DNA from: Utricularia gibba
Taxonomy: Eukaryota; Plantae; Magnoliophyta
Reading direction: 5' to 3'
Length of the DNA stretch: 41,501 nt
Assembly (NCBI GenBank): GCA_002189035.1
Contig: NEEC01000161.1
Coordinates: 1-41,501, forward strand
Shown here in pieces: positions 1 through 41,501 of the stretch (position 1 is the first letter of the stretch; the number at the start of each line of letters is the position of its first letter). The notes beneath the pieces are model-generated. The model had not been told where the DNA came from. It saw only the letters and a program-made list of their open reading frames with translations, and did no database searches. Made by a program: the position numbers and the translations under genes.

Positions 1-279
1 TACTTTATACTGAGAGGCGGTCTTGGGGGGCACTTGGAACCGGAAAAAGGTCAGCTTAGGCCTTGGCCCAAAGTAAGTTGTAGCCCGGCAAAGAAAGTGA
101 TGTATTTATTAACGTTCGGTTTTCGGTGTTGCCTACATGGTTTTTCAAGGAACAGCTTCTCGTTTTGTGGCGGCCAGTCTCGCTAGGAACTTGGTCCGGG
201 CCCGCGATTCTTTATGGCTCATGAGGACAAAAGGATGCAAATCGATGAATACAATGTTGCATTTGTTTAAAATTGCGAT

Positions 280-298
280 ATCACGTGCACCCCACATG
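280..298. promoter_or_regulatory. Sequence motif: RTCACGTG followed 11 bp later by CACATG (paired E-boxes), at essentially every monomer junction; function unproven
   Basis: ATCACGTG (280-287) at A-to-B junctions and GTCACGTG (595-602) at B-to-A junctions; CACATG at 293-298. The motif match is direct; protein binding is inference only. Confidence 0.35.
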
Positions 299-347
299 AT
301 TTTTTCAACAACTTACTTTATACTTGAGAGGCGGTCTTTGGGTGCAC
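285..347. repeat. Perfect 8 bp inverted repeat GTGCACCC / GGGTGCAC in B- and C-type heads
   Basis: GTGCACCC at 285-292 and GGGTGCAC at 340-347, with a 47 bp spacer. Type A has GGGGGCAC (one mismatch). Confidence 0.75.
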
Positions 348-605
348 CTGGAACGGGACAAAGGTAAGGTTTGGCTTGCACCGAGAGTTAGTTGTAGTCC
401 GGCAAATAAAGTGATGTATTTATTATCGTTCGGTTTTCGGGGGCTGCCTACATGGTTTTTCAAGGAACCGCTTCTCGTTTTGTGGCGGCCAGTCTCGCTG
501 GGAACTTGGTCCTTGACCCCGATTCTGTATGGCTCATGAGGTCAACTGGATGCAAATCGATTAAAAAAAATGATGCATTTGTTTAAATTACGATGTCACG
601 TGCAC
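291..605 (+). repeat. Internal degenerate ~156-158 bp direct subrepeat (each monomer is two diverged halves)
   Basis: CCCACATGATTTTTTCAACAAC (291) vs CCTACATGGTTTTTCAAGGAAC (447); GGCGGTC (330) vs GGCGGCC (484); ACCTGG (346) vs ACTTGG (504); TGGCT (372) vs TGGCT (530); GCAAAT (402) vs GCAAAT (552); TGATGTATTT (412) vs TGATGCATTT (571). The blocks are collinear, with offsets of 150-159 bp. Confidence 0.85.
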
Positions 606-623
606 CCCACATGATTTTTTTAA
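561..623. repeat. Imperfect 14-15 bp inverted repeat across B-to-A junctions
   Basis: TTAAAAAAAATGATG (561-575) vs CATGATTTTTTTAA (610-623; reverse complement TTAAAAAAATCATG): one mismatch and one extra A, with a 34 bp spacer. Confidence 0.8.
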
Positions 624-3600
624 CAACTACTTTATACATGAGGAGGCGGTCTTGGGGGCACTTGGAACCGGAAAAGGTCAGCTTAGGCCTTGGCCCAAAG
701 TAAGTTGTAGCCCGGCAAAGAAAGTGATGTATTTATTAACGTTCGGTTTTTCGGTGTTGCCTACATGGTTTTTCAAGGAACAGCTTCTCGTTTTGTGGCG
801 GCCAGTCTCGCTAGGAACTTGGTCCGGGCCCGCGATTCTTTATGGCTCATGAGGACAAAAGGATGCAAATCGATGAATACAATGTTGCATTTGTTTAAAT
901 TGCGATATCACGTGCACCCCACATGATTTTTTCAACAACTTACTTTATACTTGAGAGGCGGTCTTGGGTGCACTGGAACGGAAAAAGGTAGGTTAGGCTT
1001 GGCCCAAAGTTAGTTGTAGCCGGCAAATAAAGTGATGTATTTATTATCGTTCGGTTTTCGGGGGCTGCCTACATGGTTTTTCAAGGAACCGCTTCTCGTT
1101 TTGTGGCGGCCAGTCTCGCTGGGAACTTGGTCCTTGACCCCGATTCTGTATGGCTCATGAGGTCAACTGGATGCAAATCGATTAAAAAAAATGATGCATT
1201 TGTTTAAATTACGATGTCACGTGCACCCCACATGATTTTTTTTAACAACATACTTTATACTGAGGAGGCGGTCTTGGGGGGCACTTGGAACCGGAAAAAG
1301 GTCAGCTTAGGCCTTGGCCCAAAGTAAGTTGTAGCCCGGCAAAGAAAGTGATGTATTTATTAACGTTCGGTTTCGGTGTTGCCTACATGGTTTTTCAAGG
1401 AACAGCTTCTCGTTTTGTGGCGGCCAGTCTCGCTAGGAACTTGGTCCGGGCCCGCGATTCTTTATGGCTCATGAGGACAAAAGGATGCAAATCGATGAAT
1501 ACAATGTTGCATTTGTTTAAATTGCGATATCACGTGCACCCCACATGATTTTTTCAACAACTTACTTTATACTTGAGCAGGCGGTCTTGGGTGCACTGGA
1601 ACGGGACAAAGGTAGGTTTGGCTTGGCACGAGAGTTAGTTGTAGTCCGGCAAATAAAGTGATGTATTTATTATCGTTCGGTTTTCGGGGTGCCTACATGG
1701 TTTTTCAAGGAACCGCTTCTCGTTTTGTGGCGGCCAGTCTCGCTGGGAACTTGGTCCTTGACCCGATTCTGTATGGCTCATGAGGTCAACTGGATGCAAA
1801 TCGATTAAAAAAAATGATGCATTTGTTTAAATTACGATGTCACGTGCACCCCACATGATTTTTTCAAAACAACTTACTTTATACTTGAGAAGGCGGTCTT
1901 GGGTGCACTTGGAACCGGAAAAAGGTCAGCTTAGGCCTTGGCCCAAAGTAAGTTGTAGCCGGCAAAGAAAGTGATGTATTTATTAACGTTCGGTTTTCGG
2001 TGTTGCCTACATGGTTTTTCAAGGAACAGCTTCTCGTTTTGTGGCGGCCAGTCTCGCTAGGAACTTGGTCCGGGCCCGCGATTCTTTATGGCTCATGAGG
2101 ACAAAAGGATGCAAATCGATGAAAAAAATGTTGCATTTGTTTAAATTGCGATATCACGTGCACCCCACATGATTTTTTCAACAACTTACTTTATACTTGA
2201 GAAGGCGGTCTTGGGTGCACTTGGAACGGAAAAAGGTCAGCTTAGGCGGCCCAAGTAAGTTGTAGCCGGCAAATAAAGTGATGTATTTATTATCGTTCGG
2301 TTTTCGGGTTGCCTACATGGTTTTTCAAGGAAGCTTCTCGTTTTGTGGCGGCCAGTCTCGCTGGAACTTGGTCCCCCGATTCTGTATGGCTCATGAGGAC
2401 AAAAGGATGCAAATCGATTAAACAAAATGATCATTTGTTTAAATTGCGATATCACGTGCACCCCACATGATTTTTTCAACAACTTACTTTATACTTGAGA
2501 GGCGGTCTTTGGGTGCACTTGGAACGGGAAAAGGTAGGTTTTAGGCTTGGCCGAAAGTAAGTTGTAGCCGGCAAATAAAGTGATGTATTTATTAACGTTC
2601 GGTTTTCGGGGTGCCTACATGGTTTTTCAAGGAACAGCTTCTCGTTTTGTGGCGGCCAGTCTCGCTGGGAACTTGGTCCGACCCGATTCTTATGGCTCAT
2701 GAGGTCAACTGGATGCAAATCGATTAAAAAAATGTGCATTTGTTTAAATTACGATATCACGTGCACCCACATGATTTTTTCAAAACTTACTTTATACTTG
2801 AGGGCGGTCTTTGGGTGCACTGGAACGGAAAAAAGGTTTAGGCTTGGCCAAAGTTAGTTGTAGTCCGGCAAATAAAGTGATGTATTTATTATCGTTCGGT
2901 TTTCGGGGGCTGCCTACATGGTTTTTCAAGGAACCGCTTCTCGTTTTGTGGCGGCCAGTCTCGCTGGGAACTTGGTCCTTGACCCCGATTCTGTATGGCT
3001 CATGAGGTCAACTGGATGCAAATCGATTAAAAAAAATGATGCATTTGTTTAAATTACGATGTCACGTGCACCCACATGATTTTTTTAACAACATACTTTA
3101 TACTGAGGAGGCGGTCTTGGGGGGCACTTGGAACCGGAAAAAGGTCAGCTTAGGCCTTGGCCCAAAGTAAGTTGTAGCCCGGCAAAGAAAGTGATGTATT
3201 TATTAACGTTCGGTTTTCGGTGTTGCCTACATGGTTTTTCAAGGAACAGCTTCTCGTTTTGTGGCGGCCAGTCTCGCTAGGAACTTGGTCCGGGCCCGCG
3301 ATTCTTTATGGCTCATGAGGACAAAAGGATGCAAATCGATGAATACAATGTTGCATTTGTTTAAATTGCGATATCACGTGCACCCCACATGATTTTTTCA
3401 ACAACTTACTTTATACTTGAGCAGGCGGTCTTTGGGTGCACTTGGAACGGAAAAGGTAGGTTAGGCTTGGCCGAAAGTTAGTTGTAGTCCGGCAAATAAA
3501 GTGATGTATTTATTATCGTTCGGTTTTCGGGGGCTGCCTACATGGTTTTTCAAGGAACCGCTTCTCGTTTTGTGGCGGCCAGTCTCGCTGGGAACTTGGT

Positions 3601-6600
3601 CCTTGACCCCGATTCTGTATGGCTCATGAGGTCAACTGGATGCAAATCGATTAAAAAAAATGATGCATTTGTTTAAATTACGATGTCACGTGCACCCCAC
3701 ATGATTTTTTTAACAACTACTTTATACATGAGGAGGCGGTCTTTGGGGGGCACTTGGAACCGGAAAAAGGTCAGCTTAGGCCTTGGCCCAAAGTAAGTTG
3801 TAGCCCGGCAAAGAAAGTGATGTATTTATTAACGTTCGGTTTTCGGTGTTGCCTACATGGTTTTTCAAGGAACAGCTTCTCGTTTTGTGGCGGCCAGTCT
3901 CGCTAGGAACTTGGTCCGGGCCCGCGATTCTTTATGGCTCATGAGGACAAAAGGATGCAAATCGATGAATACAATGTTGCATTTGTTTAAATTGCGATAT
4001 CACGTGCACCCCACATGATTTTTTTCAACAACTTACTTTATACTTGAGCAGGCGGTCTTTGGGTGCACCTGGAACGGGACAAAGGTAGGTTTGGCTTGCA
4101 CGAGAGTTAGTTGTAGTCCGGCAAATAAAGTGATGTATTTATTATCGTTCGGTTTTCGGGGTGCCTACATGGTTTTTCAAGGAACCGCTTCTCGTTTTGT
4201 GGCGGCCAGTCTCGCTGGGAACTTGGTCCTTGACCCGATTCTGTATGGCTCATGAGGTCAACTGGATGCAAATCGATTAAAAAAAATGATCATTTGTTTA
4301 AATTATGATGTCACGTGCACCCCACATGATTTTTTCAAACAACTTACTTTATACTTGAGAGGCGGTCTTTGGGGCACTTGGAACCGGAAAAAGATCAGCT
4401 TAGGCCTTGGCCAAAGTAAGTTGTAGCCCGGCAAATAAAAGTGATGTATTTATTAACGTTCGGTTTTCGGGGTGCCTACATGGTTTTTCAAGGAACCGCT
4501 TCTCGTTTTGTGGCTCTCGCTGGGAACTTGGTCCTTGACCCCGATTCTGTATGGCTCATGAGGTCAACTGGATGCAAATCGATTAAAAAATGATGCATTT
4601 GTTTAAATTACGATGTCACGTGCACCCCACATGATTTTTTTAACAACATACTTTATACTGAGGAGGCGGTCTTGGGGGGCACTTGGAACCGGAAAAAGGT
4701 CAGCTTAGGCCTTGGCCCAAAGTAAGTTGTAGCCCGGCAAAGAAAGTGATGTATTTATTAACGTTCGGTTTTCGGTGTTGCCTACATGGTTTTTCAAGGA
4801 ACAGCTTCTCGTTTTGTGGCGGCCAGTCTCGCTAGGAACTTGGTCCGGGCCCCGATTCTTTATGGCTCATGAGGACAAAAGGATGCAAATCGATGAATAC
4901 AATGTTGCATTTGTTTAAATTGCGATATCACGTGCACCCCACATGATTTTTTCAACAACTTACTTTATACTTGAGGAGGCGGTCTTTGGGTGCACTTGGA
5001 ACGGAAAAAAGGTAGGTTTGGCTTGGCCAAAGTAAGTTGTAGTCCGGCAAATAAAGTGATGTATTTATTATCGTTCGGTTTTCGGGGGCTGCCTACATGG
5101 TTTTTCAAGGAACGCTTCTCGTTTTGTGGCGGCCAGTCTCGCTGGGAACTTGGTCCTTGACCCCGATTCTGTATGGCTCATGAGGTCAACTGGATGCAAA
5201 TCGATTAAAAAAAATGATGCATTTGTTTAAATTACGATGTCACGTGCACCCCACATGATTTTTTTAACAACATACTTTATACATGAGGAGGCGGTCTTGG
5301 GGGGCACTTGGAACCGGAAAAAGGTCAGCTTAGGCCTTGGCCAAAGTAAGTTGTAGCCGGCAAAGAAAGTGATGTATTTATTAACGTTCGGTTTTCGGTG
5401 TTGCCTACATGGTTTTTCAAGGAACAGCTTCTCGTTTTGTGGCGGCCAGTCTCGCTAGGAACTTGGTCACCGCGATTCTTTATGGCTCATGAGGACAAAA
5501 GGATGCAAATCGATGAATACAATGTTGCATTTGTTTAAATTGCGATATCACGTGCACCCCACATGATTTTTTCAACAACTTACTTTATACTTGAGAGGCG
5601 GTCTTTGGGTGCACTGGAACGGGACAAAGGTAGGTTTGGCTTGCCGAGAGTTAGTTGTAGTCCGGCAAATAAAGTGATGTATTTATTATCGTTCGGTTTT
5701 CGGGGCTGCCTACATGGTTTTTCAAGGAACCGCTTCTCGTTTTGTGGCGGCCAGTCTCGCTGGGAACTTGGTCCTTGACCCCGATTCTGTATGGCTCATG
5801 AGGTCAACTGGATGCAAATCGATTAAAAAAAATGATGCATTTGTTTAAATTATGATGTCACGTGCACCCCACATGATTTTTTCAACAACTTACTTTATAC
5901 TTGAGAGGCGGTCTTGGGTGCACTTGGAACCGGAAAAAGATCAGCTTAGGCCTTGGCCCAAAGTAAGTTGTAGCCCGGCAAAGAAAGTGATGTATTTATT
6001 AACGTTCGGTTTTCGGTGTTGCCTACATGGTTTTTCAAGGAACAGCTTCTCGTTTTGTGGCGGCCAGTCTCGCTGGGAACTTGGTCCGACCCCGATTCTT
6101 ATGGCTCATGAGGTCAACTGGATGCAAATCGATTAAAAAAATGATGCATTTGTTTAAATTGCGATATCACGTGCACCCCACATGATTTTTTCAACAACTT
6201 ACTTTATACTTGAGAGGCGGTCTTTGGGGCACTTGGAACGGAAAAAGATCAGCTTAGGCCTTGGCCCAAAGTAAGTTGTAGCCCGGCAAAGAAAGTGATG
6301 TATTTATTATCGTTCGGTTTTCGGTTGCCTACATGGTTTTTCAAGGAACAGCTTCTCGTTTTGTGGCGGCCAGTCTCGCTAGGAACTTGGTCCGGGCCCG
6401 CGATTCTTTATGGCTCATGAGGACAAAGGATGCAAATCGATGAATACAATGTTGCATTTGTTTAAATTGCGATATCACGTGCACCCACATGATTTTTTCA
6501 ACAACTTACTTTATACTTGAGCAGGCGGTCTTTGGGTGCACTGGAACGGACAAAGGTAAGGTTTGGCTTGCAGAGAGTTAGTTGTAGTCCGGCAAATAAA

Positions 6601-9600
6601 GTGATGTATTTATTATCGTTCGGTTTTCGGGGGCTGCCTACATGGTTTTTCAAGGAACCGCTTCTCGTTTTGTGGCGGCCAGTCTCGCTGGGAACTTGGT
6701 CCTTGACCCCGATTCTGTATGGCTCATGAGGTCAACTGGATGCAAATCGATTAAAAAAAATGATGCATTTGTTTAAATTACGATGTCACGTGCACCCCAC
6801 ATGATTTTTTAACAACATACTTTATACATGAGGAGGCGGTCTTGGGGGGCACTTGGAACCGGAAAAAGGTCAGCTTAGGCCTTGGCCCAAAGTAAGTTGT
6901 AGCCCGGCAAAGAAAGTGATGTATTTATTAACGTTCGGTTTTCGGTGTTGCCTACATGGTTTTTCAAGGAACAGCTTCTCGTTTTGTGGCGGCCAGTCTC
7001 GCTAGGAACTTGGTCCGGGCCCGCGATTCTTTATGGCTCATGAGGACAAAAGGATGCAAATCGATGAATACAATGTTGCATTTGTTTAAATTGCGATATC
7101 ACGTGCACCCCACATGATTTTTTCAACAACTTACTTTATACTTGAGAGGCGGTCTTGGGGCACTTGGAACGGAAAAGGTAGGTTAGGCTTGCCAAAGTGT
7201 TGTAGTCCGGCAAATAAAGTGATGTATTTATTATCGTTCGGTTTTCGGGGGCTGCCTACATGGTTTTTCAAGGAACCGCTTCTCGTTTTTGGCGGCCAGT
7301 CTCGCTGGGAACTTGGTCCTTGACCCCGATTCTGTATGGCTCATGAGGTCAACTGGATGCAAATCGATTAAAAAAAATGATGCATTTGTTTAAATTACGA
7401 TGTCACGTGCACCCCACATGATTTTTTAACAACATACTTTATACATGAGAAGGCGGTCTTGGGGGCACTTGGAACCGGAAAAAGGTCAGCTTAGGCCTTG
7501 GCCCAAAGTAAGTTGTAGCCCGGCAAAGAAAGTGATGTATTTATTAACGTTCGGTTTTCGGTGTTGCCTACATGGTTTTTCAAGGAACAGCTTCTCGTTT
7601 TGTGGCGGCCAGTCTCGCTAGGAACTTGGTCCGGCCCGCGATTCTTTATGGCTCATGAGGACAAAAGGATGCAAATCGATGAAACAATGTTGCATTTGTT
7701 TAAATTGCGATATCACGTGCACCCCACATGATTTTTTCAACAACTTACTTTATACTTGAGCAGGCGGTCTTTGGGTGCACCTGGAACGGAAAAGGTAGGT
7801 TTGGCTTGCCGAAGTTAGTTGTAGTCCGGCAAATAAAGTGATGTATTTATTATCGTTCGGTTTTCGGGGCTGCCTACATGGTTTTTCAAGGAACCGCTTC
7901 TCGTTTTGTGGCGGCCAGTCTCGCTGGGAACTTGGTCCTTGACCCCGATTCTGTATGGCTCATGAGGTCAACTGGATGCAAATCGATTAAAAAAAATGAT
8001 GCATTTGTTTAAATTACGATGTCACGTGCACCCCACATGATTTTTTTAACAACATACTTTATACATGAGGAGGCGGTCTTGGGGGGCACTTGGAACCGGA
8101 AAAAGATCAGCTTAGGCCTTGGCCCAAAGTAAGTTGTAGCCCGGCAAAGAAAGTGATGTATTTATTAACGTTCGGTTTTCGGTGTTGCCTACATGGTTTT
8201 TCAAGGAACAGCTTCTCGTTTTGTGGCGGCCAGTCTCGCTAGGAACTTGGTCCGGGCCGCGATTCTTTATGGCTCATGAGGACAAAAGGATGCAAATCGA
8301 TGAATACAATGTTGCATTTGTTTAAATTGCGATATCACGTGCACCCCACATGATTTTTTCAACAACTTACTTTATACTTGAGAGGCGGTCTTTGGGTGCA
8401 CCTGGAACGGGACAAAGGTAGGTTTGGCTTGCCGAGAGTTAGTTGTAGTCCGGCAAATAAAGTGATGTATTTATTATCGTTCGGTTTTCGGGGCTGCCTA
8501 CATGGTTTTTCAAGGAACGCTTCTCGTTTTGTGGCGGCCAGTCTCGCTGGGAACTTGGTCCTTGACCCCGATTCTGTATGGCTCATGAGGTCAACTGGAT
8601 GCAAATCGATTAAAAAAAATGATCCATTTGTTTAAATTATGATGTCACGTGCACCCCACATGATTTTTTTCAACAACTTACTTTATACTTGAGAGGCGGT
8701 CTTTGGGTGCACTTGGAACCGGAAAAAGTCAGCTTAGGCCTTGGCCCAAAGTAAGTTGTAGCCCGGCAAAGAAAGTGATGTATTTATTAACGTTCGGTTT
8801 TCGGTGTTGCCTACATGGTTTTTCAAGGAACAGCTTCTCGTTTGTGGCGGCCAGTCTCGCTAGGAACTTGGTCCGGGCCCGCGATTCTTTATGGCTCATG
8901 AGGACAAAAGGATGCAAATCGATGAATACAATGTTGCATTTGTTTAAATTGCGATATCACGTGCACCCCACATGATTTTTTCAACAACTTACTTTATACT
9001 TGAGCAGGCGGTCTTTGGGTGCACCTGGAACGGGACAAAGGTAAGGTTTGGCTTGCACCGAGAGTTAGTTGTAGTCCGGCAAATAAAGTGATGTATTTAT
9101 TATCGTTCGGTTTTCGGGGGCTGCCTACATGGTTTTTCAAGGAACCGCTTCTCGTTTTTGGCGGCCAGTCTCGCTGGGAACTTGGTCCTTGACCCCGATT
9201 CTGTATGGCTCATGAGGTCAACTGGATGCAAATCGATTAAAAAAAATGATGCATTTGTTTAAATTACGATGTCACGTGCACCCACATGATTTTTTTAACA
9301 ACATACTTTATACATGAGGAGGCGGTCTTGGGGCACTTGGAACCGGAAAAAGGTCAGCTTAGGCCTTGGCCCAAAGTAAGTTGTAGCCCGGCAAAGAAAG
9401 TGATGTATTTATTAACGTTCGGTTTTCGGTGTTGCCTACATGGTTTTTCAAGGAACAGCTTCTCGTTTTGTGGCGGCCAGTCTCGCTAGGAACTTGGTCC
9501 GGGCCCGCGATTCTTTATGGCTCATGAGGACAAAAGGATGCAAATCGATGAATACAATGTTGCATTTGTTTAAATTGCGATATCACGTGCACCCCACATG

Positions 9601-9894
9601 ATTTTTTCAACAACTTACTTTATACTTGAGAGGCGGTCTTGGGTGCACTGGAACGGAAAAAGGTAAGGTTAGGCTTGCACCAAAGTTAGTTGTAGTCCGG
9701 CAAATAAAGTGATGTATTTATTATCGTTCGGTTTTCGGGGGCTGCCTACATGGTTTTTCAAGGAACCGCTTCTCGTTTTGTGGCGGCCAGTCTCGCTGGG
9801 AACTTGGTCCTTGACCCCGATTCTGTATGGCTCATGAGGTCAACTGGATGCAAATCGATTAAAAAAAATGATGCATTTGTTTAAATTACGATGT

Positions 9895-10208
9895 CACGTG
9901 CACCCCACATGATTTTTTTAACAACATACTTTATACATGAGGAGGCGGTCTTGGGGGGCACTTGGAACCGGAAAAAGGTCAGCTTAGGCCTTGGCCCAAA
10001 GTAAGTTGTAGCCCGGCAAAGAAAGTGATGTATTTATTAACGTTCGGTTTTCGGTGTTGCCTACATGGTTTTTCAAGGAACAGCTTCTCGTTTTGTGGCG
10101 GCCAGTCTCGCTAGGAACTTGGTCCGGGCCCGCGATTCTTTATGGCTCATGAGGACAAAAGGATGCAAATCGATGAATACAATGTTGCATTTGTTTAAAT
10201 TGCGATAT
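9895..10208 (+). repeat. Type A monomer, clean exemplar (314 bp)
   Basis: Diagnostic alleles: TAACAACATAC, CATGAGGAGG, GGGGGGCACTTGGAACCGG, GTCAGCTTAGGCCTTGGCCCAAAGTAAG, GCCCGGCAAAGAAAG, AACGTT, CGGTGTTGCC, AACAGC, CTAGG, CCGGGCCCGCG, GACAAAAGG, GATGAATACAATGTTGC, TTGCGATAT. Confidence 0.95.
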
Positions 10209-11133
10209 CACGTGCACCCCACATGATTTTTTCAACAACTTACTTTATACTTGAGAGGCGGTCTTTGGGTGCACTGGAACGGAAAAGGTCAGTTTGGCTT
10301 GCCGAAGTTAGTTGTAGTCCGGCAAATAAAGTGATGTATTTATTATCGTTCGGTTTTCGGGGGCTGCCTACATGGTTTTTCAAGGAACCGCTTCTCGTTT
10401 TGTGGCGGCCAGTCTCGCTGGGAACTTGGTCCTTGACCCCGATTCTGTATGGCTCATGAGGTCAACTGGATGCAAATCGATTAAAAAAAATGATGCATTT
10501 GTTTAAATTACGATGTCACGTGCACCCCACATGATTTTTTCAACAACTTACTTTATACTGAGGAGGCGGTCTTGGGGGCACTTGGAACCGGAAAAAGATC
10601 AGCTTAGGCCTTGGCCCAAAGTAAGTTGTAGCCCGGCAAAGAAAGTGATGTATTTATTAACGTTCGGTTTTCGGTGTGCCTACATGGTTTTTCAAGGAAC
10701 AGCTTCTCGTTTTGTGGCGGCCAGTCTCGCTGGGAACTTGGTCCGACCCCGATTCTGTATGGCTCATGAGGTCAACTGGATGCAAATCGATTAAAAAAAA
10801 TGATGCATTTGTTTAAATTACGATGTCACGTGCACCCCACATGATTTTTTAACAACTACTTTATACATGAGGAGGCGGTCTTGGGGGCACTTGGAACCGG
10901 AAAAAGGTCAGCTTAGGCCTTGGCCCAAAGTAAGTTGTAGCCGGCAAAGAAAGTGATGTATTTATTAACGTTCGGTTTTCGGTGTTGCCTACATGGTTTT
11001 TCAAGGAACAGCTTCTCGTTTTGTGGCGGCCAGTCTCGCTGGAACTTGGTCCGGGCCCGATTCTTATGGCTCATGAGGACAAAAGGATGCAAAATCGATG
11101 AATACAATGTTGCATTTGTTTAAATTGCGATAT

Positions 11134-29789: not shown

Positions 29790-32700
29790 CACGTGCACCC
29801 CACATGATTTTTTCAACAACTTACTTTATACTTGAGGAGGCGGTCTTGGGGGCACTTGGAACGGAAAAAGGTAGCTTAGGCTTGCCCAAAGTAAGTTGTA
29901 GTCCGGCAAATAAAGTGATGTATTTATTATCGTTCGGTTTTCGGGGGCTGCCTACATGGTTTTTCAAGGAACCGCTTCTCGTTTTGTGGCGGCCAGTCTC
30001 GCTGGGAACTTGGTCCTTGACCCCGATTCTGTATGGCTCATGAGGTCAACTGGATGCAAATCGATTAAAAAAAATGATGCATTTGTTTAAATTACGATGT
30101 CACGTGCACCCCACATGATTTTTTTAACAACATACTTTATACATGAGGAGGCGGTCTTGGGGGGCACTTGGAACCGGAAAAAGGTCAGCTTAGGCCTTGG
30201 CCCAAAGTAAGTTGTAGCCCGGCAAAGAAAGTGATGTATTTATTAACGTTCGGTTTTCGGTGTTGCCTACATGGTTTTTCAAGGAACAGCTTCTCGTTTT
30301 GTGGCGGCCAGTCTCGCTAGGAACTTGGTCCGGGCCGCGATTCTTTATGGCTCATGAGGACAAAAGGATGCAAATCGATGAATACAATGTTGCATTTGTT
30401 TAAATTGCGATATCACGTGCACCCCACATGATTTTTTCAACAACTTACTTTATACTTGAGCAGGCGGTCTTTGGGTGCACCTGGAACGGGACAAAGGTAA
30501 GGTTTGGCTTGCACGAGAGTTAGTTGTAGTCCGGCAAATAAAGTGATGTATTTATTATCGTTCGGTTTTCGGGGGCTGCCTACATGGTTTTTCAAGGAAC
30601 CGCTTCTCGTTTTGTGGCGGCCAGTCTCGCTGGGAACTTGGTCCTTGACCCCGATTCTGTATGGCTCATGAGGTCAACTGGATGCAAATCGATTAAAAAA
30701 AATGATCCATTTGTTTAAATTATGATGTCACGTGCACCCCACATGATTTTTTCAACAACTACTTTATACTTGAGAAGGCGGTCTTTGGGGCACTTGGAAC
30801 CGGAAAAAGATCAGCTTAGGCCTTGGCCCAAAGTAAGTTGTAGCCCGGCAAAGAAAGTGATGTATTTATTAACGTTCGGTTTTCGGTGTTGCCTACATGG
30901 TTTTTCAAGGAACAGCTTCTCGTTTTGTGGCGGCCAGTCTCGCTAGGAACTTGGTCCGGGCCCGCGATTCTTTATGGCTCATGAGGACAAAAGGATGCAA
31001 ATCGATGAATACAATGTTGCATTTGTTTAAATTGCGATATCACGTGCACCCCACATGATTTTTTCAACAACTTACTTTATACTTGAGCAGGCGGTCTTTG
31101 GGTGCACCTGGAACGGGACAAAGGTAAGGTTTGGCTTGCACCGAGAGTTAGTTGTAGTCCGGCAAATAAAGTGATGTATTTATTATCGTTCGGTTTTCGG
31201 GGGCTGCCTACATGGTTTTTCAAGGAACCGCTTCTCGTTTTGTGGCGGCCAGTCTCGCTGGGAACTTGGTCCTTGACCCCGATTCTGTATGGCTCATGAG
31301 GTCAACTGGATGCAAATCGATTAAAAAAAATGATGCATTTGTTTAAATTACGATGTCACGTGCACCCCACATGATTTTTTTAACAACATACTTTATACAT
31401 GAGGAGGCGGTCTTGGGGGCACTTGGAACCGGAAAAAGGTCAGCTTAGGCCTTGGCCCAAAGTAAGTTGTAGCCCGGCAAAGAAAGTGATGTATTTATTA
31501 ACGTTCGGTTTTCGGTGTTGCCTACATGGTTTTTCAAGGAACAGCTTCTCGTTTTGTGGCGGCCAGTCTCGCTAGGAACTTGGTCCGGGCCCGCGATTCT
31601 TTATGGCTCATGAGGACAAAAGGATGCAAATCGATGAATACAATGTTGCATTTGTTTAAATTGCGATATCACGTGCACCCCACATGATTTTTTCAACAAC
31701 TTACTTTATACTTGAGAGGCGGTCTTTGGGTGCACTTGGAACGGAAAAGATAGCTTAGGCTTGCCCAAAGTAAGTTGTAGTCCGGCAAATAAAGTGATGT
31801 ATTTATTATCGTTCGGTTTTCGGGGGCTGCCTACATGGTTTTTCAAGGAACCGCTTCTCGTTTTGTGGCGGCCAGTCTCGCTGGGAACTTGGTCCTTGAC
31901 CCCGATTCTGTATGGCTCATGAGGTCAACTGGATGCAAATCGATTAAAAAAAATGATGCATTTGTTTAAATTACGATGTCACGTGCACCCCACATGATTT
32001 TTTTAACAACATACTTTATACATGAGGAGGCGGTCTTGGGGCACTTGGAACCGGAAAAAGGTCAGCTTAGGCCTTGGCCCAAAGTAAGTTGTAGCCCGGC
32101 AAAGAAAGTGATGTATTTATTAACGTTCGGTTTTCGGTGTTGCCTACATGGTTTTTCAAGGAACAGCTTCTCGTTTTGTGGCGGCCAGTCTCGCTAGGAA
32201 CTTGGTCCGGGCCCGCGATTCTTTATGGCTCATGAGGACAAAAGGATGCAAATCGATGAATACAATGTTGCATTTGTTTAAATTGCGATATCACGTGCAC
32301 CCCACATGATTTTTTCAACAACTTACTTTATACTTGAGCAGGCGGTCTTTGGGTGCACTGGAACGGACAAAGGTAAGGTTTGGCTTGCCCGAAGTTAGTT
32401 GTAGTCCGGCAAATAAAGTGATGTATTTATTATCGTTCGGTTTTCGGGGGCTGCCTACATGGTTTTTCAAGGAACCGCTTCTCGTTTTGTGGCGGCCAGT
32501 CTCGCTGGGAACTTGGTCCTTGACCCCGATTCTGTATGGCTCATGAGGTCAACTGGATGCAAATCGATTAAAAAAATGATGCATTTGTTTAAATTACGAT
32601 GTCACGTGCACCCCACATGATTTTTTTAACAACTACTTTATACATGAGGAGGCGGTCTTGGGGGCACTTGGAACCGGAAAAAGGTCAGCTTAGGCCTTGG

Positions 32701-33844
32701 CCCAAAGTAAGTTGTAGCCCGGCAAAGAAAGTGATGTATTTATTAACGTTCGGTTTTCGGTGTTGCCTACATGGTTTTTCAAGGAACAGCTTCTCGTTTT
32801 GTGGCGGCCAGTCTCGCTAGGAACTTGGTCCGGGCCGCGATTCTTTATGGCTCATGAGGACAAAAGGATGCAAATCGATGAATACAATGTTGCATTTGTT
32901 TAAATTGCGATATCACGTGCACCCCACATGATTTTTTCAACAACTTACTTTATACTTGAGCAGGCGGTCTTTGGGCACCTGGAACGGGACAAAGGTAAGG
33001 TTTGGCTTGCCGAGAGTTAGTTGTAGTCCGGCAAATAAAGTGATGTATTTATTATCGTTCGGTTTTCGGGGCTGCCTACATGGTTTTTCAAGGAACCGCT
33101 TCTCGTTTTGTGGCGGCCAGTCTCGCTGGGAACTTGGTCCTTGACCCCGATTCTGTATGGCTCATGAGGTCAACTGGATGCAAATCGATTAAAAAAAATG
33201 ATGCATTTGTTTAAATTACGATGTCACGTGCACCCCACATGATTTTTTTAACAACATACTTTATACATGAGGAGGCGGTCTTGGGGGCACTTGGAACCGG
33301 AAAAAGGTCAGCTTAGGCCTTGGCCCAAAGTAAGTTGTAGCCCGGCAAAGAAAGTGATGTATTTATTAACGTTCGGTTTTCGGTGTTGCCTACATGGTTT
33401 TTCAAGGAACAGCTTCTCGTTTTGGCGGCCAGTCTCGCTAGGAACTTGGTCCGGGCCCGCGATTCTTTATGGCTCATGAGGACAAAAGGATGCAAATCGA
33501 TGAATACAATGTTGCATTTGTTTAAATTGCGATATCACGTGCACCCCACATGATTTTTTCAACAACTTACTTTATACTTGAGAGGCGGTCTTTGGGGGCA
33601 CTGGAACGGAAAAGATCAGCTTAGGCTTGCCCAAAGTAAGTTGTAGTCCGGCAAATAAAGTGATGTATTTATTATCGTTCGGTTTTCGGGGCTGCCTACA
33701 TGGTTTTTCAAGGAACCGCTTCTCGTTTTGTGGCGGCCAGTCTCGCTGGGAACTTGGTCCTTGACCCCGATTCTGTATGGCTCATGAGGTCAACTGGATG
33801 CAAATCGATTAAAAAAAATGATGCATTTGTTTAAATTACGATGT
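29790..33844 (+). repeat. Local hexamer periodicity (D-A-B-A-B-A)n, ~1870 bp
   Basis: D monomers at 29790, 31670 and 33536 (spacing 1880, 1866), each pair separated by A-B-A-B-A. Confidence 0.55.
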
Positions 33845-36800
33845 CACGTGCACCCCACATGATTTTTTTAACAACATACTTTATACATGAGGAGGCGGTC
33901 TTGGGGGCACTTGGAACCGGAAAAAGGTCAGCTTAGGCCTTGGCCCAAAGTAAGTTGTAGCCCGGCAAAGAAAGTGATGTATTTATTAACGTTCGGTTTT
34001 CGGTGTTGCCTACATGGTTTTTCAAGGAACAGCTTCTCGTTTTGTGGCGGCCAGTCTCGCTAGGAACTTGGTCCGGGCCGCGATTCTTTATGGCTCATGA
34101 GGACAAAAGGATGCAAATCGATGAATACAATGTTGCATTTGTTTAAATTGCGATATCACGTGCACCCCACATGATTTTTTCAACAACTTACTTTATACTT
34201 GAGAGGCGGTCTTTGGGTGCACCTGGAACGGGACAAAGGTAGGTTTGGCTTGCAAGAGTTAGTTGTAGTCCGGCAAATAAAGTGATGTATTTATTATCGT
34301 TCGGTTTTCGGGGCTGCCTACATGGTTTTTCAAGGAACCGCTTCTCGTTTTGTGGCGGCCAGTCTCGCTGGGAACTTGGTCCTTGACCCCGATTCTGTAT
34401 GGCTCATGAGGTCAACTGGATGCAAATCGATTAAAAAAAATGATCCATTTGTTTAAATTATGATGTCACGTGCACCCCACATGATTTTTTCAACAACTTA
34501 CTTTATACTTGAGAAGGCGGTCTTTGGGTGCACTTGGAACCGGAAAAAGATCAGCTTAGGCCTTGGCCCAAAGTAAGTTGTAGCCCGGCAAAGAAAGTGA
34601 TGTATTTATTAACGTTCGGTTTTCGGTGTTGCCTACATGGTTTTTCAAGGAACAGCTTCTCGTTTTGTGGCGGCCAGTCTCGCTGGGAACTTGGTCCTTG
34701 ACCCCGATTCTGTATGGCTCATGAGGTCAACTGGATGCAAATCGATTAAAAAAAAATGATGCATTTGTTTAAATTGCGATATCACGTGCACCCCACATGA
34801 TTTTTTCAACAACTTACTTTATACTTGAGGAGGCGGTCTTTGGGTGCACTTGGAACCGGAAAAAGATCAGCTTAGGCCTTGGCCCAAAGTAAGTTGTAGC
34901 CCGGCAAAGAAAGTGATGTATTTATTAACGTTCGGTTTTCGGTGTTGCCTACATGGTTTTTCAAGGAACAGCTTCTCGTTTTGTGGCGGCCAGTCTCGCT
35001 AGGAACTTGGTCCGGCCCGCGATTCTTTATGGCTCATGAGGACAAAAGGATGCAAATCGATGAATACAATGTTGCATTTGTTTAAATTGCGATATCACGT
35101 GCACCCCACATGATTTTTTCAACAACTTACTTTATACTTGAGCAGGCGGTCTTTGGTGCACCTGGAACGGGACAAAGGTAGGTTTGGCTTGCACGAGAGT
35201 TAGTTGTAGTCCGGCAAATAAAGTGATGTATTTATTATCGTTCGGTTTTCGGGGCTGCCTACATGGTTTTTCAAGGAACCGCTTCTCGTTTTGTGGCGGC
35301 CAGTCTCGCTGGGAACTTGGTCCTTGACCCCGATTCTGTATGGCTCATGAGGTCAACTGGATGCAAATCGATTAAAAAAAATGATGCATTTGTTTAAATT
35401 ATGATGTCACGTGCACCCCACATGATTTTTTCAACAACTTACTTTATACTTGAGGAGGCGGTCTTTGGGTGCACTTGGAACCGGAAAAAGATCAGCTTAG
35501 GCCTTGGCCCAAAGTAAGTTGTAGCCCGGCAAAAAAGTGATGTATTTATTAACGTTCGGTTTTCGGGTTGCCTACATGGTTTTTCAAGGAACCGCTTCTC
35601 GTTTTGTGGCGGCCAGTCTCGCTGGGAACTTGGTCCTTGACCCGATTCTGTATGGCTCATGAGGTCAACTGGATGCAAATCGATTAAAAAAATGATGCAT
35701 TTGTTTAAATTACGATGTCACGTGCACCCCACATGATTTTTTAACAACTACTTTATACTGAGAGGCGGTCTTGGGGCACTTGGAACCGGAAAAAGGTCAG
35801 CTTAGGCCTTGGCCCAAAGTAAGTTGTAGCCCGGCAAAGAAAGTGATGTATTTATTAACGTTCGGTTTTCGGTGTTGCCTACATGGTTTTTCAAGGAACA
35901 GCTTCTCGTTTTGTGGCGGCCAGTCTCGCTAGGAACTTGGTCCGGGCCCGCGATTCTTTATGGCTCATGAGGACAAAAGGATGCAAATCGATGAATACAA
36001 TGTTGCATTTGTTTAAATTGCGATATCACGTGCACCCCACATGATTTTTCAACAACTTACTTTATACTGAGGAGGCGGTCTTGGGGGCACTTGGAACGGA
36101 AAAAGATCAGCTTAGGCCTTGGCCCAAAGTAAGTTGTAGTCCGGCAAATAAAGTGATGTATTTATTATCGTTCGGTTTTCGGGGGCTGCCTACATGGTTT
36201 TTCAAGGAACCGCTTCTCGTTTTGTGGCGGCCAGTCTCGCTGGGAACTTGGTCCTTGACCCCGATTCTGTATGGCTCATGAGGTCAACTGGATGCAAATC
36301 GATTAAAAAAAATGATGCATTTGTTTAAATTACGATGTCACGTGCACCCCACATGATTTTTTTAACAACATACTTTATACATGAGGAGGCGGTCTTGGGG
36401 GGCACTTGGAACCGGAAAAAGGTCAGCTTAGGCCTTGGCCCAAAGTAAGTTGTAGCCCGGCAAAGAAAGTGATGTATTTATTAACGTTCGGTTTTCGGTG
36501 TTGCCTACATGGTTTTTCAAGGAACAGCTTCTCGTTTTGTGGCGGCCAGTCTCGCTAGGAACTTGGTCCGGGCCGCGATTCTTTATGGCTCATGAGGACA
36601 AAAGGATGCAAATCGATGAATACAATGTTGCATTTGTTTAAATTGCGATATCACGTGCACCCCACATGATTTTTTCAACAACTTACTTTATACTTGAGCA
36701 GGCGGTCTTTGGGTGCACCTGGAACGGGACAAAGGTAGGTTTGGCTTGCACGAGAGTTAGTTGTAGTCCGGCAAATAAAGTGATGTATTTATTATCGTTC

Positions 36801-37904
36801 GGTTTTCGGGGGCTGCCTACATGGTTTTTCAAGGAACCGCTTCTCGTTTTGTGGCGGCCAGTCTCGCTGGGAACTTGGTCCTTGACCCCGATTCTGTATG
36901 GCTCATGAGGTCAACTGGATGCAAATCGATTAAAAAAAAATGATCCATTTGTTTAAATTATGATGTCACGTGCACCCCACATGATTTTTTCAACAACTTA
37001 CTTTATACTTGAGAAGGCGGTCTTTGGGTGCACTTGGAACCGGAAAAAGATCAGCTTAGGCCTTGGCCCAAAGTAAGTTGTAGCCCGGCAAAGAAAGTGA
37101 TGTATTTATTAACGTTCGGTTTTCGGTGTTGCCTACATGGTTTTTCAAGGAACAGCTTCTCGTTTTGTGGCGGCCAGTCTCGCTGGGAACTTGGTCCTTG
37201 ACCCCGATTCTTATGGCTCATGAGGTCAACTGGATGCAAATCGATTAAAAAAATGATGCATTTGTTTAAATTGCGATATCACGTGCACCCCACATGATTT
37301 TTTCAACAAATACTTTATACTTGAGAAGGCGGTTTGGGTGCACTTGGAACCGGAAAAAGATCAGCTTAGGCCTTGGCCCAAAGTAAGTTGTAGCCCGGCA
37401 AAGAAAGTGATGTATTTATTAACGTTCGGTTTTCGGTGTTGCCTACATGGTTTTTCAAGGAACAGCTTCTCGTTTTGTGGCGGCCAGTCTCGCTAGGAAC
37501 TTGGTCCGGCCCGCGATTCTTTATGGCTCATGAGGACAAAAGGATGCAAATCGATGAATACAATGTTGCATTTGTTTAAATTGCGATATCACGTGCACCC
37601 CACATGATTTTTTCAACAACTTACTTTATACTTGAGCAGGCGGTCTTTGGGTGCACTTGGAACGGGACAAAGGTAAGGTTTGGCTTGCCCGAGAGTTAGT
37701 TGTAGTCCGGCAAATAAAGTGATGTATTTATTATCGTTCGGTTTTCGGGGGCTGCCTACATGGTTTTTCAAGGAACCGCTTCTCGTTTTGTGGCGGCCAG
37801 TCTCGCTGGGAACTTGGTCCTTGACCCCGATTCTGTATGGCTCATGAGGTCAACTGGATGCAAATCGATTAAAAAAAATGATGCATTTGTTTAAATTACG
37901 ATGT
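33536..37904 (+). repeat. Candidate octamer higher-order repeat (D-A-B'-C-A'-B'-D*-A), ~2.49 kb, ~1.75 tandem copies
   Basis: D at 33536 and 36027, B' (GATCCATTT/TATGATGT tail) at 34157 and 36652, C at 34467 and 36967, A' at 34783 and 37280. Offsets are 2491-2500 bp. Confidence 0.55.
34467..34782 (+). repeat. Type C mosaic monomer (A-type body, B-type 3' tract, A-type end), exemplar
   Basis: Head TTGAGAAGG...TTTGGGTGCACTTGGAACCGGAAAAAGATCAG, A alleles through AACAGC, B alleles CTGGG/CCTTGACCCC/GTCAACTGG/TTAAAAAAAA, then A-type TTGCGATAT. The same architecture occurs at 5859, 18906, 20434 and 36967. Confidence 0.75.
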
Positions 37905-40713
37905 CACGTGCACCCCACATGATTTTTTTAACAACATACTTTATACATGAGGAGGCGGTCTTGGGGGGCACTTGGAACCGGAAAAAAGGTCAGCTTAGGC
38001 CTTGGCCCAAAGTAAGTTGTAGCCCGGCAAAGAAAGTGATGTATTTATTAACGTTCGGTTTTCGGTGTTGCCTACATGGTTTTTCAAGGAACAGCTTCTC
38101 GTTTTGTGGCGGCCAGTCTCGCTAGGAACTTGGTCCGGGCCCGCGATTCTTTATGGCTCATGAGGACAAAAGGATGCAAATCGATGAATACAATGTTGCA
38201 TTTGTTTAAATTGCGATATCACGTGCACCCCACATGATTTTTTCAACAACTTACTTTATACTTGAGCAGGCGGTCTTTGGGGGCACTTGGAACGGAAAAG
38301 GTAGGTTTGGCCTTGCCCAAAGTTAGTTGTAGTCCGGCAAATAAAGTGATGTATTTATTATCGTTCGGTTTTCGGGGGCTGCCTACATGGTTTTTCAAGG
38401 AACCGCTTCTCGTTTTGTGGCGGCCAGTCTCGCTGGGAACTTGGTCCTTGACCCCGATTCTGTATGGCTCATGAGGTCAACTGGATGCAAATCGATTAAA
38501 AAAAATGATGCATTTGTTTAAATTATGATGTCACGTGCACCCCACATGATTTTTTTAACAACATACTTTATACATGAGGAGGCGGTCTTGGGGGGCACTT
38601 GGAACCGGAAAAAGGTCAGCTTAGGCCTTGGCCCAAAGTAAGTTGTAGCCCGGCAAAGAAAGTGATGTATTTATTAACGTTCGGTTTTCGGTGTTGCCTA
38701 CATGGTTTTTCAAGGAACAGCTTCTCGTTTTGTGGCGGCCAGTCTCGCTAGGAACTTGGTCCGGGCCCGCGATTCTTTATGGCTCATGAGGACAAAAGGA
38801 TGCAAATCGATGAATACAATGTTGCATTTGTTTAAATTGCGATATCACGTGCACCCCACATGATTTTTTCAACAACTTACTTTATACTTGAGCAGGCGGT
38901 CTTTGGGTGCACCTGGAACGGACAAAGGTAAGGTTTGGCTTGCACGAGAGTTAGTTGTAGTCCGGCAAATAAAGTGATGTATTTATTATCGTTCGGTTTT
39001 CGGGGGCTGCCTACATGGTTTTTCAAGGAACCGCTTCTCGTTTTGTGGCGGCCAGTCTCGCTGGGAACTTGGTCCTTGACCCCGATTCTGTATGGCTCAT
39101 GAGGTCAACTGGATGCAAATCGATTAAAAAAATGATCCATTTGTTTAAATTATGATGTCACGTGCACCCCACATGATTTTTTCAACAACTTACTTTATAC
39201 TTGAGGAGGCGGTCTTTGGGCACTTGGAACCGGAAAAAGATCAGCTTAGGCCTTGGCCCAAAGTAAGTTGTAGCCCGGCAAAGAAAGTGATGTATTTATT
39301 AACGTTCGGTTTTCGGTTTGCCTACATGGTTTTTCAAGGAACAGCTTCTCGTTTTGTGGCGGCCAGTCTCGCTAGGAACTTGGTCCGGCCCCGATTCTTT
39401 ATGGCTCATGAGGACAAAAATGCAAATCGATGAATAAAATGTTGCATTTGTTTAAATTGCGATATCACGTGCACCCCACATGATTTTTTCAACAACTTAC
39501 TTTATACTTGAGCAGGCGGTCTTTGGGTGCACTTGGAACGGAAAAAGGTCAGCTTAGGCTTGCCCAAAGTAAGTTGTAGTCCGGCAAATAAAGTGATGTA
39601 TTTATTATCGTTCGGTTTTCGGGTTGCCTACATGGTTTTTCAAGGAACCGCTTCTCGTTTTGTGGCGGCCAGTCTCGCTGGGAACTTGGTCCTTGACCCC
39701 GATTCTGTATGGCTCATGAGGTCAACTGGATGCAAATCGATTAAAAAAAATGATGCATTTGTTTAAATTATGATGTCACGTGCACCCCACATGATTTTTT
39801 TCAACAACTTACTTTATACTTGAGAAGGCGGTCTTTGGGTGCACTTGGAACCGGAAAAAGATCAGCTTAGGCCTTGGCCCAAAGTAAGTTGTAGCCCGGC
39901 AAAGAAAGTGATGTATTTATTAACGTTCGGTTTTCGTGTTGCCTACATGGTTTTTCAAGGAACAGCTTCTCGTTTTGTGGCGGCCAGTCTCGCTAGGAAC
40001 TTGGTCCGGGGCCCGCGATTCTTTATGGCTCATGAGGACAAAAGGATGCAAATCGATGAATACAATGTTGCATTTGTTTAAATTGCGATATCACGTGCAC
40101 CCCACATGATTTTTTCAACAACTTACTTTATACTTGAGGAGGCGGTCTTTGGGCACTGGAACGGGACAAAGGTAAGCTTTGGCTTGCACCAGAGTTAGTT
40201 GTAGTCCGGCAAATAAAGTGATGTATTTATTATCGTTCGGTTTTCGGGGGCTGCCTACATGGTTTTTCAAGGAACCGCTTCTCGTTTTGTGGCGGCCAGT
40301 CTCGCTGGGAACTTGGTCCTTGACCCCGATTCTGTATGGCTCATGAGGTCAACTGGATGCAAATCGATTAAAAAAAAATGATGCATTTGTTTAAATTACG
40401 ATGTCACGTGCACCCCACATGATTTTTTTAACAACATACTTTATACTGAGGAGGCGGTCTTGGGGGCACTTGGAACCGGAAAAAATCAGCTTAGGCCTTG
40501 GCCCAAAGTAAGTTGTAGCGGCAAAGAAAGTGATGTATTTATTAACGTTCGGTTTTCGGTGTTGCCTACATGGTTTTTCAAGGAACAGCTTCTCGTTTTG
40601 TGGCGGCCAGTCTCGCTAGGAACTTGGTCCGGGCCCGCGATTCTTTATGGCTCATGAGGACAAAAGGATGCAAATCGATGAATACAATGTTGCATTTGTT
40701 TAAATTGCGATAT

Positions 40714-41026
40714 CACGTGCACCCCACATGATTTTTTCAACAACTTACTTTATACATGAGGAGGCGGTCTAGGGGCACTTGGAATCGGAAAAAGATCAGC
40801 TTAGGCTTGGCCCAAAGTAAGTTGTAGTCCGGCAAATAAAGTGATGTATTTATTATCGTTCGGTTTTCGGGGGCTGCCTACATGGTTTTTCAAGGAACCG
40901 CTTCTCGTTTTGTGGCGGCCAGTCTCGCTGGGAACTTGGTCCTTGACCCCGATTCTGTATGGCTCATGAGGTCAACTGGATGCAAATCGATTAAAAAAAA
41001 TGATGCATTTGTTTAAATTATGATGT
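40714..41026 (+). repeat. Type D mosaic monomer (A-like head, B-type body and tail), exemplar
   Basis: A-like GATCAGCTTAGGCTTGGCCCAAAGTAAG is joined to B-type GTAGTCCGGCAAATAAAG and a B tail. Similar copies occupy the B slot at 11134, 13625, 14869, 16425, 17972, 20130, 21992, 29790, 31670, 33536, 36027 and 39466. Confidence 0.7.
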
Positions 41027-41501
41027 CACGTGCACCCCACATGATTTTTTTAACAACTTACTTTATACTGAGAGGCGGTCTTTGGGTGCACTTGGAACCG
41101 GAAAAAGGTCAGCTTAGGCCTTGGCCCAAAGTAAGTTGTAGCCCGGCAAAGAAAGTGATGTATTTATTAACGTTCGGTTTTCGGTGTTGCCTACATGGTT
41201 TTTCAAGGAACAGCTTCTCGTTTTGTGGCGGCCAGTCTCGCTAGGAACTTGGTCCGGGCCCGCGATTCTTTATGGCTCATGAGGACAAAAAGGATGCAAA
41301 TCGATGAATACAATGTTGCATTTGTTTAAATTGCGATATCACGTGCACCCCACATGATTTTTTCAACAACTTACTTTATACTTGAGCAGGCGGTCTTTGG
41401 GTGCACCTGGAACGGGACAAAGGTAAGGTTTGGCTTGCACGAGAGTTAGTTGTAGTCCGGCAATAAAAGTGATGTATTTATTATCGTTCGGTTTTCGGGG
41501 G

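What the first reader, a model, noticed from the sequence alone, without database searches (positions are those of the whole stretch)
282..41339. Nested hierarchy: ~157 bp -> ~315 bp -> ~630 bp -> 1.25/1.87/2.5 kb
Seen: six collinear similarity blocks at 150-159 bp offsets inside each monomer, strict A/B alternation over most of the array, and longer local periodicities. Known: ~155-156 bp is the monomer length of centromeric satellites such as rice CentO and maize CentC, and layered higher-order repeats characterise primate alpha satellite. Inferred: successive doublings of a nucleosome-sized unit, consistent with a (peri)centromeric satellite. I could not recognise the family, so it may be undescribed.
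Basis: partly seen in the sequence, partly recalled or inferred. Interest (0 to 1): 0.75.

Follow-up and report, generated by a model that had tools for sequence, protein, structure and literature searches.

The report
Plant 313-bp satellite built from dimers
The whole window is one ordinary non-coding plant satellite whose 313-letter unit is an old doubled 157-letter unit and now repeats as an A/B pair, and nothing here shows that it marks a centromere.

Summary
The 41.5-kb window is one uninterrupted head-to-tail array of 134 monomers of about 313 bp.

Three layers are real:
- **157 bp:** each monomer is an old, much-diverged dimer of ~157-bp halves. The halves are ~62% identical and align in register (nhmmer E = 6e-5; beats shuffles at p = 0.001-0.02).
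- **313 bp:** there are two monomer types, A and B. They are 88% alike between types and 95-97% alike within a type (~99% and ~97.5% counting substitutions only).
- **626 bp:** A and B alternate at 109 of 132 junctions.

Above 626 bp there is no doubling series:
- Every break in alternation that I inspected sits at or next to a mosaic or chimeric monomer; most have an A-like head and a B-like tail. This is the expected footprint of crossing-over between partners misaligned by one monomer.
- These slips give odd-numbered units of 3, 5, 7 and 15 monomers.
- Only one short local higher-order repeat passes a permutation test: a 6-mer of 1.87 kb, about 3.5 copies (p about 0.004).
- A 4-mer (1.25 kb) is visible but weak. 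The 2.5-kb layer is not supported.

I found no gene, RNA family, tRNA, telomere repeat or transposon in the window. No array edge is visible.

A centromeric role is untested and has no support here. The scan already found this family on other pieces of the same genome, a plant that its notes call Utricularia gibba. My verdict is a new member of a well-known kind, of low to moderate interest.

The parts
1..41501 (+). Uninterrupted tandem array of 134 monomers of ~313 bp, all in one orientation. It runs off both ends of the window.
   Evidence: TRF 1-41498, period 313, 133.4 copies. nhmmer segmentation with monomer spacing 290-316 bp.
629..941 (+). Example A-type monomer. There are about 60 pure A copies, about 99% alike by substitutions at every distance.
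942..1252 (+). Example B-type monomer. There are 64 copies, 88% like A. B is a mosaic series: pure B, B with an A-like head, and B with an A-like tail.
132..145 (+). First copy of the 14-nt box CCYACATGRTTTTT, the best-kept part of the two 157-bp halves. It occurs 264 times, twice per monomer, about 155/158 bp apart. The CCT..G and CCC..A forms alternate in every row shown.
   Evidence: 264 matches against 0.01 expected.
5892..6200 (+). Chimeric C monomer, with an A head up to alignment column ~161 and B from column ~192. It is one of nine. The others start at 10550, 15215, 16764, 18937, 20467, 34500, 35441 and 37000. Each sits where the A/B register slips.
   Evidence: Diagnostic-site strings; positions and spacings 15, 15, 5, 7, 5, 45, 3, 5 monomers.
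27951..34499 (+). Local 6-monomer (1.87 kb) higher-order repeat of about 3.5 copies: A, B with A-like head, A, B with A-like tail, A, pure B.
   Evidence: Lag-6 similarity 0.97 against 0.89 at lag 2; subtype codes; permutation 2/500.
10858..15214 (+). Local 4-monomer (1.25 kb) alternation of two B subtypes, about 3.5 copies. The signal is weak.
   Evidence: Subtype codes; lag 4 at 0.79 against lag 2 at 0.77.
2789..5891 (+). Two copies of a 5-monomer (1.56 kb) unit, B-A-B-A-B.
   Evidence: Lag-5 similarity 0.84; codes.
2188..3094 (+). Three short (298-306 bp), poorly classifiable monomers at a register slip. This is either rearranged sequence or low-quality sequence.

Best explanation
This is non-coding satellite DNA of a plant. 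I place it most likely in a heterochromatin block, but the window does not show where on the chromosome it lies.

Proposed history:
1. A ~157-bp unit doubled long ago into a 313-bp monomer. The halves are now about 62% alike, a Jukes-Cantor distance of about 0.5.
2. Much later the monomer split into types A and B, which are 12% apart.
3. The A-B pair (626 bp) became the unit that is copied and kept uniform.

The array is maintained by unequal crossing-over and gene conversion between sister or homologous arrays.
- In-register exchange keeps the dimers 97-99% alike over the whole 41 kb.
- Exchange between partners misaligned by one monomer creates hybrid monomers with an A head and a B tail. 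These shift the register and produce units of 3, 5, 7 and 15 monomers.
- Short local duplications create transient 4-, 5- and 6-monomer repeats.

Shown here: the anatomy, the statistics of each layer, and the chimeras at the slip points. Inferred: the order of events, the recombination mechanism, and the heterochromatic state.
For: - One array, one strand, no insert.
- Identity is 0.966 within A, 0.947 within B and 0.877 between them. Counting substitutions only, it is about 0.99 (A) and about 0.975 (B), flat over lags 2-32.
- The half-repeat is supported.
- Nine C chimeras share the same breakpoint zone. Each is preceded by B and followed by A, which is exactly the product expected from A x B misaligned crossing-over.
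- The B-B slips at monomers 14/15, 69/70 and 90/91 also involve a B with an A-like head.
- No coding or RNA content was found: no Rfam match at E<=1 in the first 3 kb, no tRNA, no Pfam match in the six ORFs scanned.
- Single-strand DNA folding is no better than shuffles, z = 0.44.
Against: - The 157-bp similarity is modest (p about 0.02 for the B consensus alone), so convergence cannot be excluded.
- Much of the variation between copies is homopolymer-length noise typical of an unpolished long-read assembly. Fine subtype calls, and hence some local repeats, could be affected.
- No flank is visible, so chromosomal location and chromatin state are inferred only.
- Recombination is inferred from its products, not observed.
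Confidence: 0.85

Rival explanations
1. It is the functional centromeric satellite: CENH3 nucleosomes sit on the 157-bp halves, and the array forms the kinetochore-bearing core of one or more chromosomes.
For: - The sub-unit is 156-157 bp, close to nucleosome size.
- AT-rich dinucleotides have their strongest period at 156 bp.
- A 14-nt box is kept twice per monomer in 264 of about 267 half-units.
- The array is very homogeneous and longer than 41 kb, with a dimeric higher-order structure.
- The relative Genlisea nigrocaulis has a 161-bp centromere-associated repeat (PMC4542322).
Against: - None of these features is specific to centromeres.
- The window holds no CRM or any other retrotransposon.
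- Unchecked scan notes place CRM elements beside other, kilobase-monomer satellites of this genome, and copia fragments in the 313-bp family.
- PMC8333044 reports that putative U. gibba centromeres lack satellite repeats.
- The primers for the Genlisea 161-bp repeat do not match.
Confidence: 0.2
2. The 157-bp half-similarity does not come from a duplication. It reflects chance or convergence, for example one protein-binding or nucleosome-positioning box needed twice per monomer.
For: - Most of the signal comes from a few blocks, above all the 14-nt box and its T-run.
- Consensus B alone reaches only p about 0.02, and its best ungapped lag does not beat shuffles.
Against: - The blocks are collinear across nearly the whole half.
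- nhmmer aligns positions 26-153 to 26-152 in register at E = 5.7e-5.
- For consensus A, lag 156/157 is the best of all lags and beats the maximum over all lags of every one of 500 shuffles.
Confidence: 0.1
3. The slips, chimeras and local higher-order repeats are artefacts of assembling noisy long reads through a near-identical array. Only the 313/626-bp periodicity is real.
For: - Indels are 3% and 33 alignment columns have partial gaps.
- From reading the sequence, these concentrate in homopolymer runs.
- Three monomers at 2188-3094 look degraded.
Against: - The nine C chimeras share the same switch at 13 or more diagnostic substitution sites, not at indels.
- The B subtypes are likewise defined by linked substitutions.
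- Random consensus error would not produce linked multi-site haplotypes.
Confidence: 0.12

Closest known systems
Dimeric and higher-order satellites such as primate alpha satellite (dimeric and multimeric HORs)
   Same: Two diverged monomer types (12% apart) alternate in a unit that is itself 97-99% uniform across the array. Register slips occur at hybrid monomers. Local gain and loss go in whole-monomer steps.
   Different: - There is no sequence relation to alpha satellite.
- The basic unit is 313 bp, itself an old dimer.
- There is no stable multimeric unit above the dimer in this window.
- Centromere function is not shown.
Grass centromeric satellites CentO (155 bp) and CentC (156 bp)
   Same: The sub-unit length of about 157 bp is in the same range.
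   Different: - The resemblance in length is the only shared feature established here.
- Sequence similarity was not tested, because no reference sequence is at hand.
- The source is not a grass (by the scan's notes it is a member of the Lamiales).
- CENH3 binding is unknown.
Silene latifolia X43.1 subtelomeric satellite (313-bp consensus; PMC3212565)
   Same: It has the same consensus length and is a plant satellite with internal duplications. It shows that a 313-bp satellite need not be centromeric.
   Different: The published X43.1 probe 12H5 gives no meaningful alignment to either consensus (best local score 21), so the families are unrelated.
Genlisea nigrocaulis Gn7c161, a 161-bp centromere-associated repeat (PMC4542322)
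   Same: It comes from the same plant family as the source named in the scan's notes, and its monomer size is similar to the 157-bp half.
   Different: Neither published primer matches the window, even with up to 3 mismatches.

Membership tests
Tandem satellite DNA | Long head-to-tail array of a non-coding unit with high identity between copies | tested here: met
   134 monomers, period 313, over more than 41 kb. No Rfam, tRNA or Pfam content was found.
Higher-order repeat (alpha-satellite style) | Diverged monomers arranged in a multi-monomer unit whose copies are far more alike than neighbouring monomers | tested here: met
   Met for the A-B dimer. Identity is 0.88 at lag 1 and 0.946 at lag 2 with gaps counted, and 0.98-0.99 between monomers of the same type counting substitutions only.
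Higher-order repeat (alpha-satellite style) | A regular unit of more than two monomers held across the array (the 1.25 / 1.87 / 2.5 kb layers) | tested here: not met
   Same-type identity is flat over lags 2-32. Only one local 6-mer block of about 3.5 copies passes permutation, at 2/500. Units of 3, 5, 7 and 15 monomers also occur.
Nested doubling from a ~157-bp unit | The two halves of the monomer align in register better than composition-matched shuffles | tested here: met
   p = 0.001-0.006 for A and about 0.02 for B over 1000 shuffles; nhmmer E = 5.7e-5 in register.
Plant centromeric satellite (CentO/CentC type) | Binding of CENH3 and location at the primary constriction | not testable with these tools
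   This needs ChIP-seq or FISH.
Plant centromeric satellite (CentO/CentC type) | Interspersed centromeric (CRM) retrotransposons | tested here: not met
   No insertion of any kind in 41.5 kb; all monomer spacings are 290-316 bp. A pure core array could still lack them.
Plant centromeric satellite (CentO/CentC type) | Sequence similarity to CentO or CentC | not tested
Silene X43.1 (313 bp) | Similarity to the published consensus probe | tested here: not met
   Best local score 21 for the 50-nt probe.
5S-rDNA-derived satellite (reported elsewhere in this genome by scan notes) | A recognisable 5S rRNA gene remnant in the monomer | tested here: not met
   No Rfam match at E<=1 in 3 kb, both strands. 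A very decayed remnant could still escape detection.
Subtelomeric satellite | Adjacent to or mixed with telomere repeats | tested here: inconclusive
   No plant telomere repeat in the window, but no array edge is visible either.

The most novel reading that the evidence does not exclude
The 313-bp family is the missing centromeric satellite of at least some chromosomes of a genome whose centromeres have been described as free of satellites (PMC8333044, citing the long-read genome paper). The arrays would sit in small unplaced contigs. The conserved 14-nt box, present twice per monomer, would be a binding or positioning site for centromeric chromatin.
Probability: 0.15. Interest if true: 0.5.

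Novelty: new member of a known kind. Interest (0 to 1): 0.25.

Why it matters
Taken alone this is a textbook satellite, and the way it grows (doubling, dimer fixation, register slips at hybrid monomers) is well known. Its modest value is as a clean, fully dissected example.

Its other value depends on the source. The scan's notes say the genome is Utricularia gibba; this is unverified. If so, arrays longer than 40 kb exist in a very small genome whose putative centromeres are reported to lack satellites. Locating this family on the chromosomes would test whether that report reflects biology or gaps in the assembly.

Tried and rejected
- **A ~104-bp (one-third) period.** A loose 10-mer anchor hit every ~104 bp. 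Ungapped lags 104-108 on the consensus do not exceed the shuffles' maximum. Rejected.
- **A 15-monomer repeat.** High similarity at lag 15 is mostly the effect of an odd lag coming back into phase across one C slip, since lags 11, 13 and 15 rise together. Not accepted as a repeat unit.
- **Strict alternation of two C subtypes.** This was suggested but did not hold with four tail sites. Dropped.
- **Origin from a 5S rRNA gene, a tRNA or another RNA gene.** No Rfam or tRNA match.
- **Origin from a transposon coding region.** No Pfam match in six ORFs.
- **Dyad symmetry or cruciform potential.** Folding z = 0.44.
- **Relatives elsewhere.** Two invariant words of 23 and 26 nt gave no exact match in metagenome contigs. 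There was no plasmid match. A look-up by sequence in the scan's notes was blank.
- **Literature.** Four monomer words were found in no paper. No paper in the library describes a Utricularia satellite. The genome paper (PMC5465930) is not held.
- It held a typed monomer-type string. I re-derived the string inside the script instead.
Full report
**What is there**

The window is a single tandem array. Tandem Repeats Finder gives one row: 1-41498, period 313, 133.4 copies, 88% matches and 3% indels. Base composition is flat at 44-45% G+C, with a constant strand bias (GC skew about +0.12, AT skew about -0.11). Searching with one monomer by nhmmer cuts the window into 134 consecutive same-strand monomers spaced 290-316 bp apart. 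There is no foreign insertion, and the array runs off both ends of the window.

**The 313 and 626 bp layers**

- After alignment, the 133 complete monomers fall into two types: 69 A and 64 B in the two-way split.
- Identity is 0.966 within A, 0.947 within B and 0.877 between them. The two consensuses differ at 39 of 316 columns.
- Much of the difference within a type is indels (33 partly gapped columns). From reading the sequence these lie mainly in homopolymer runs. Counting substitutions only, A copies are about 99% alike and B copies about 97.5% alike.
- A and B alternate strictly at 109 of 132 junctions. The longest clean run is 21 monomers.
The 626-bp dimer is the unit that is kept uniform.

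**The 157 bp layer**

- Raw autocorrelation has a distinct peak at lags 155-157 (0.32 against a median of 0.254).
- On consensus A the circular lag 156/157 is the best of all lags. Its 113 matches exceed the best lag of every one of 500 dinucleotide shuffles. Consensus B is weaker on this ungapped measure.
- A gapped alignment of the two halves gives 61-63% identity over about 147 columns.
- Scanning the same rotations on 1000 shuffles, the observed score is reached 1-6 times for A and 17-20 times for B.
- nhmmer aligns half 1 to half 2 of the overall consensus almost end to end and in register (26-153 to 26-152) at E = 5.7e-5.
- The strongest block is a 14-nt box, CCYACATGRTTTTT. It occurs 264 times, twice per monomer, with two alternating variants.
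The layer is real but old.
- With about 38% mismatch between halves and about 10.5% between A and B, the first doubling is roughly five times older than the A/B split. This is a simple distance inference that assumes a molecular clock.

**Above 626 bp**

- Between monomers of the same type, identity does not depend on distance from lag 2 to lag 32. No regular larger unit spans the array.
- The breaks in alternation are not random. Nine monomers are chimeras with A states at the first seven diagnostic sites and B states from alignment column ~192 onward.
- These chimeras are monomers 20, 35, 50, 55, 62, 67, 112, 115 and 120. Each is preceded by B and followed by A. The array therefore reads (AB)n-C with spacings of 15, 15, 5, 7, 5, 45, 3 and 5 monomers.
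- That is the product expected when an A pairs with a B one monomer out of register and a crossover occurs within them.
- The B-B junctions at monomers 14/15, 69/70 and 90/91 likewise involve a B with an A-like head.
- B as a whole is a mosaic series (pure B, A-like head, A-like tail), while A is uniform.
- A sliding scan on 41 informative columns shows local periodicities:
  - A 6-mer (1.87 kb) over monomers 91-111 scores 0.97 at lag 6 against 0.89 at lag 2. Only 2 of 500 within-type permutations reach this.
  - A 4-mer (1.25 kb) over monomers 36-49 is visible in the subtype codes but marginal numerically (0.79 against 0.77).
  - There is also a 5-mer present twice (monomers 10-19) and a 5+7 = 12-monomer pattern around monomers 50-67.
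  - An 8-mer (2.5 kb) has no convincing support.
- The odd-numbered units contradict a hierarchy of successive doublings beyond 626 bp.

**What it is not**

- There was no Rfam match at E<=1 in the first 3 kb, no tRNA and no Pfam domain in the six ORFs scanned.
- There was no plant telomere repeat.
- Single-strand DNA folding is no better than shuffles (z = 0.44).
- The monomer is unrelated to the 313-bp Silene X43.1 satellite (probe test; PMC3212565).
- It is also unrelated to the Genlisea 161-bp centromere-associated repeat (primer tests; PMC4542322).

**Source and location**

- The window itself carries nothing that identifies the organism.
- The scan's notes call it a plant, and one follow-up names Utricularia gibba. 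I could not verify this.
- The notes also report the same 312-313-bp family on other pieces of the genome, with other local units (a five-piece grammar, 2.19 kb, 1.25 kb) and with a co-amplified copia fragment. They place CRM elements beside different, kilobase-monomer satellites.
- PMC8333044, citing the long-read genome paper, states that putative centromeres of U. gibba lack satellite repeats and have few centromeric chromoviruses.
- Monomer length and dimeric organisation do not discriminate centromeric from subtelomeric or interstitial satellites. I therefore rate a centromeric role at about 0.2.

**Mechanism**

The best reading is a non-coding satellite maintained by unequal crossing-over and gene conversion.

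- In-register exchange homogenises the A-B dimers.
- Exchange one monomer out of register produces the A-head/B-tail hybrids and the odd-numbered units.
- Short local duplications give transient 4- to 6-monomer repeats.

The anatomy and statistics are shown here. The recombination events, their order and the heterochromatic state are inferred.

**Novelty**

The kind is well known, and the scan has already found this family on other DNA of the same genome. The family itself is not described in any paper I could search. The sequence databases that would settle this are not available here.

Noticed in passing
window 1-41501 (A and B consensus, alignment): The fixed differences between the A and B consensuses are 25 transversions and only 7 transitions. 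This fits a uniform mutation model (p = 0.12) but is far from the transition excess usual for methylated plant repeats (p = 0.001 against 50% transitions). CpG is also not depleted (observed/expected 0.94).
   Followed up: partly
window 132-145, 291-304 and every ~157 bp onward: The 14-nt box CCYACATGRTTTTT is kept in 264 of about 267 half-monomers. In the second half of each monomer it is preceded by a CACGTG palindrome (a G-box/E-box core). It is a possible protein-binding site; this was not tested.
   Followed up: partly
whole window: From reading the sequence and the variable-column lists, much of the difference between copies is homopolymer-length indels, which I did not quantify. Identity is 0.95-0.97 with gaps against 0.975-0.99 counting substitutions only. 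This looks like consensus error of an unpolished long-read assembly.
   Followed up: partly
window 2188-3094: Three consecutive short monomers (298, 303 and 306 bp) have mixed or unreadable A/B states at a register slip. This is either a complex rearrangement or a low-quality stretch.
   Followed up: no
whole window: There is a constant strand asymmetry (GC skew about +0.12, AT skew about -0.11). CWG trinucleotides are at 0.58 of expectation. Both are properties of one repeated monomer, so they carry little statistical weight.
   Followed up: no
whole window: The strongest period of AT-rich dinucleotides in the consensus dimer is 156 bp, followed by 52 bp. There is no 10-bp helical periodicity.
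   Followed up: no
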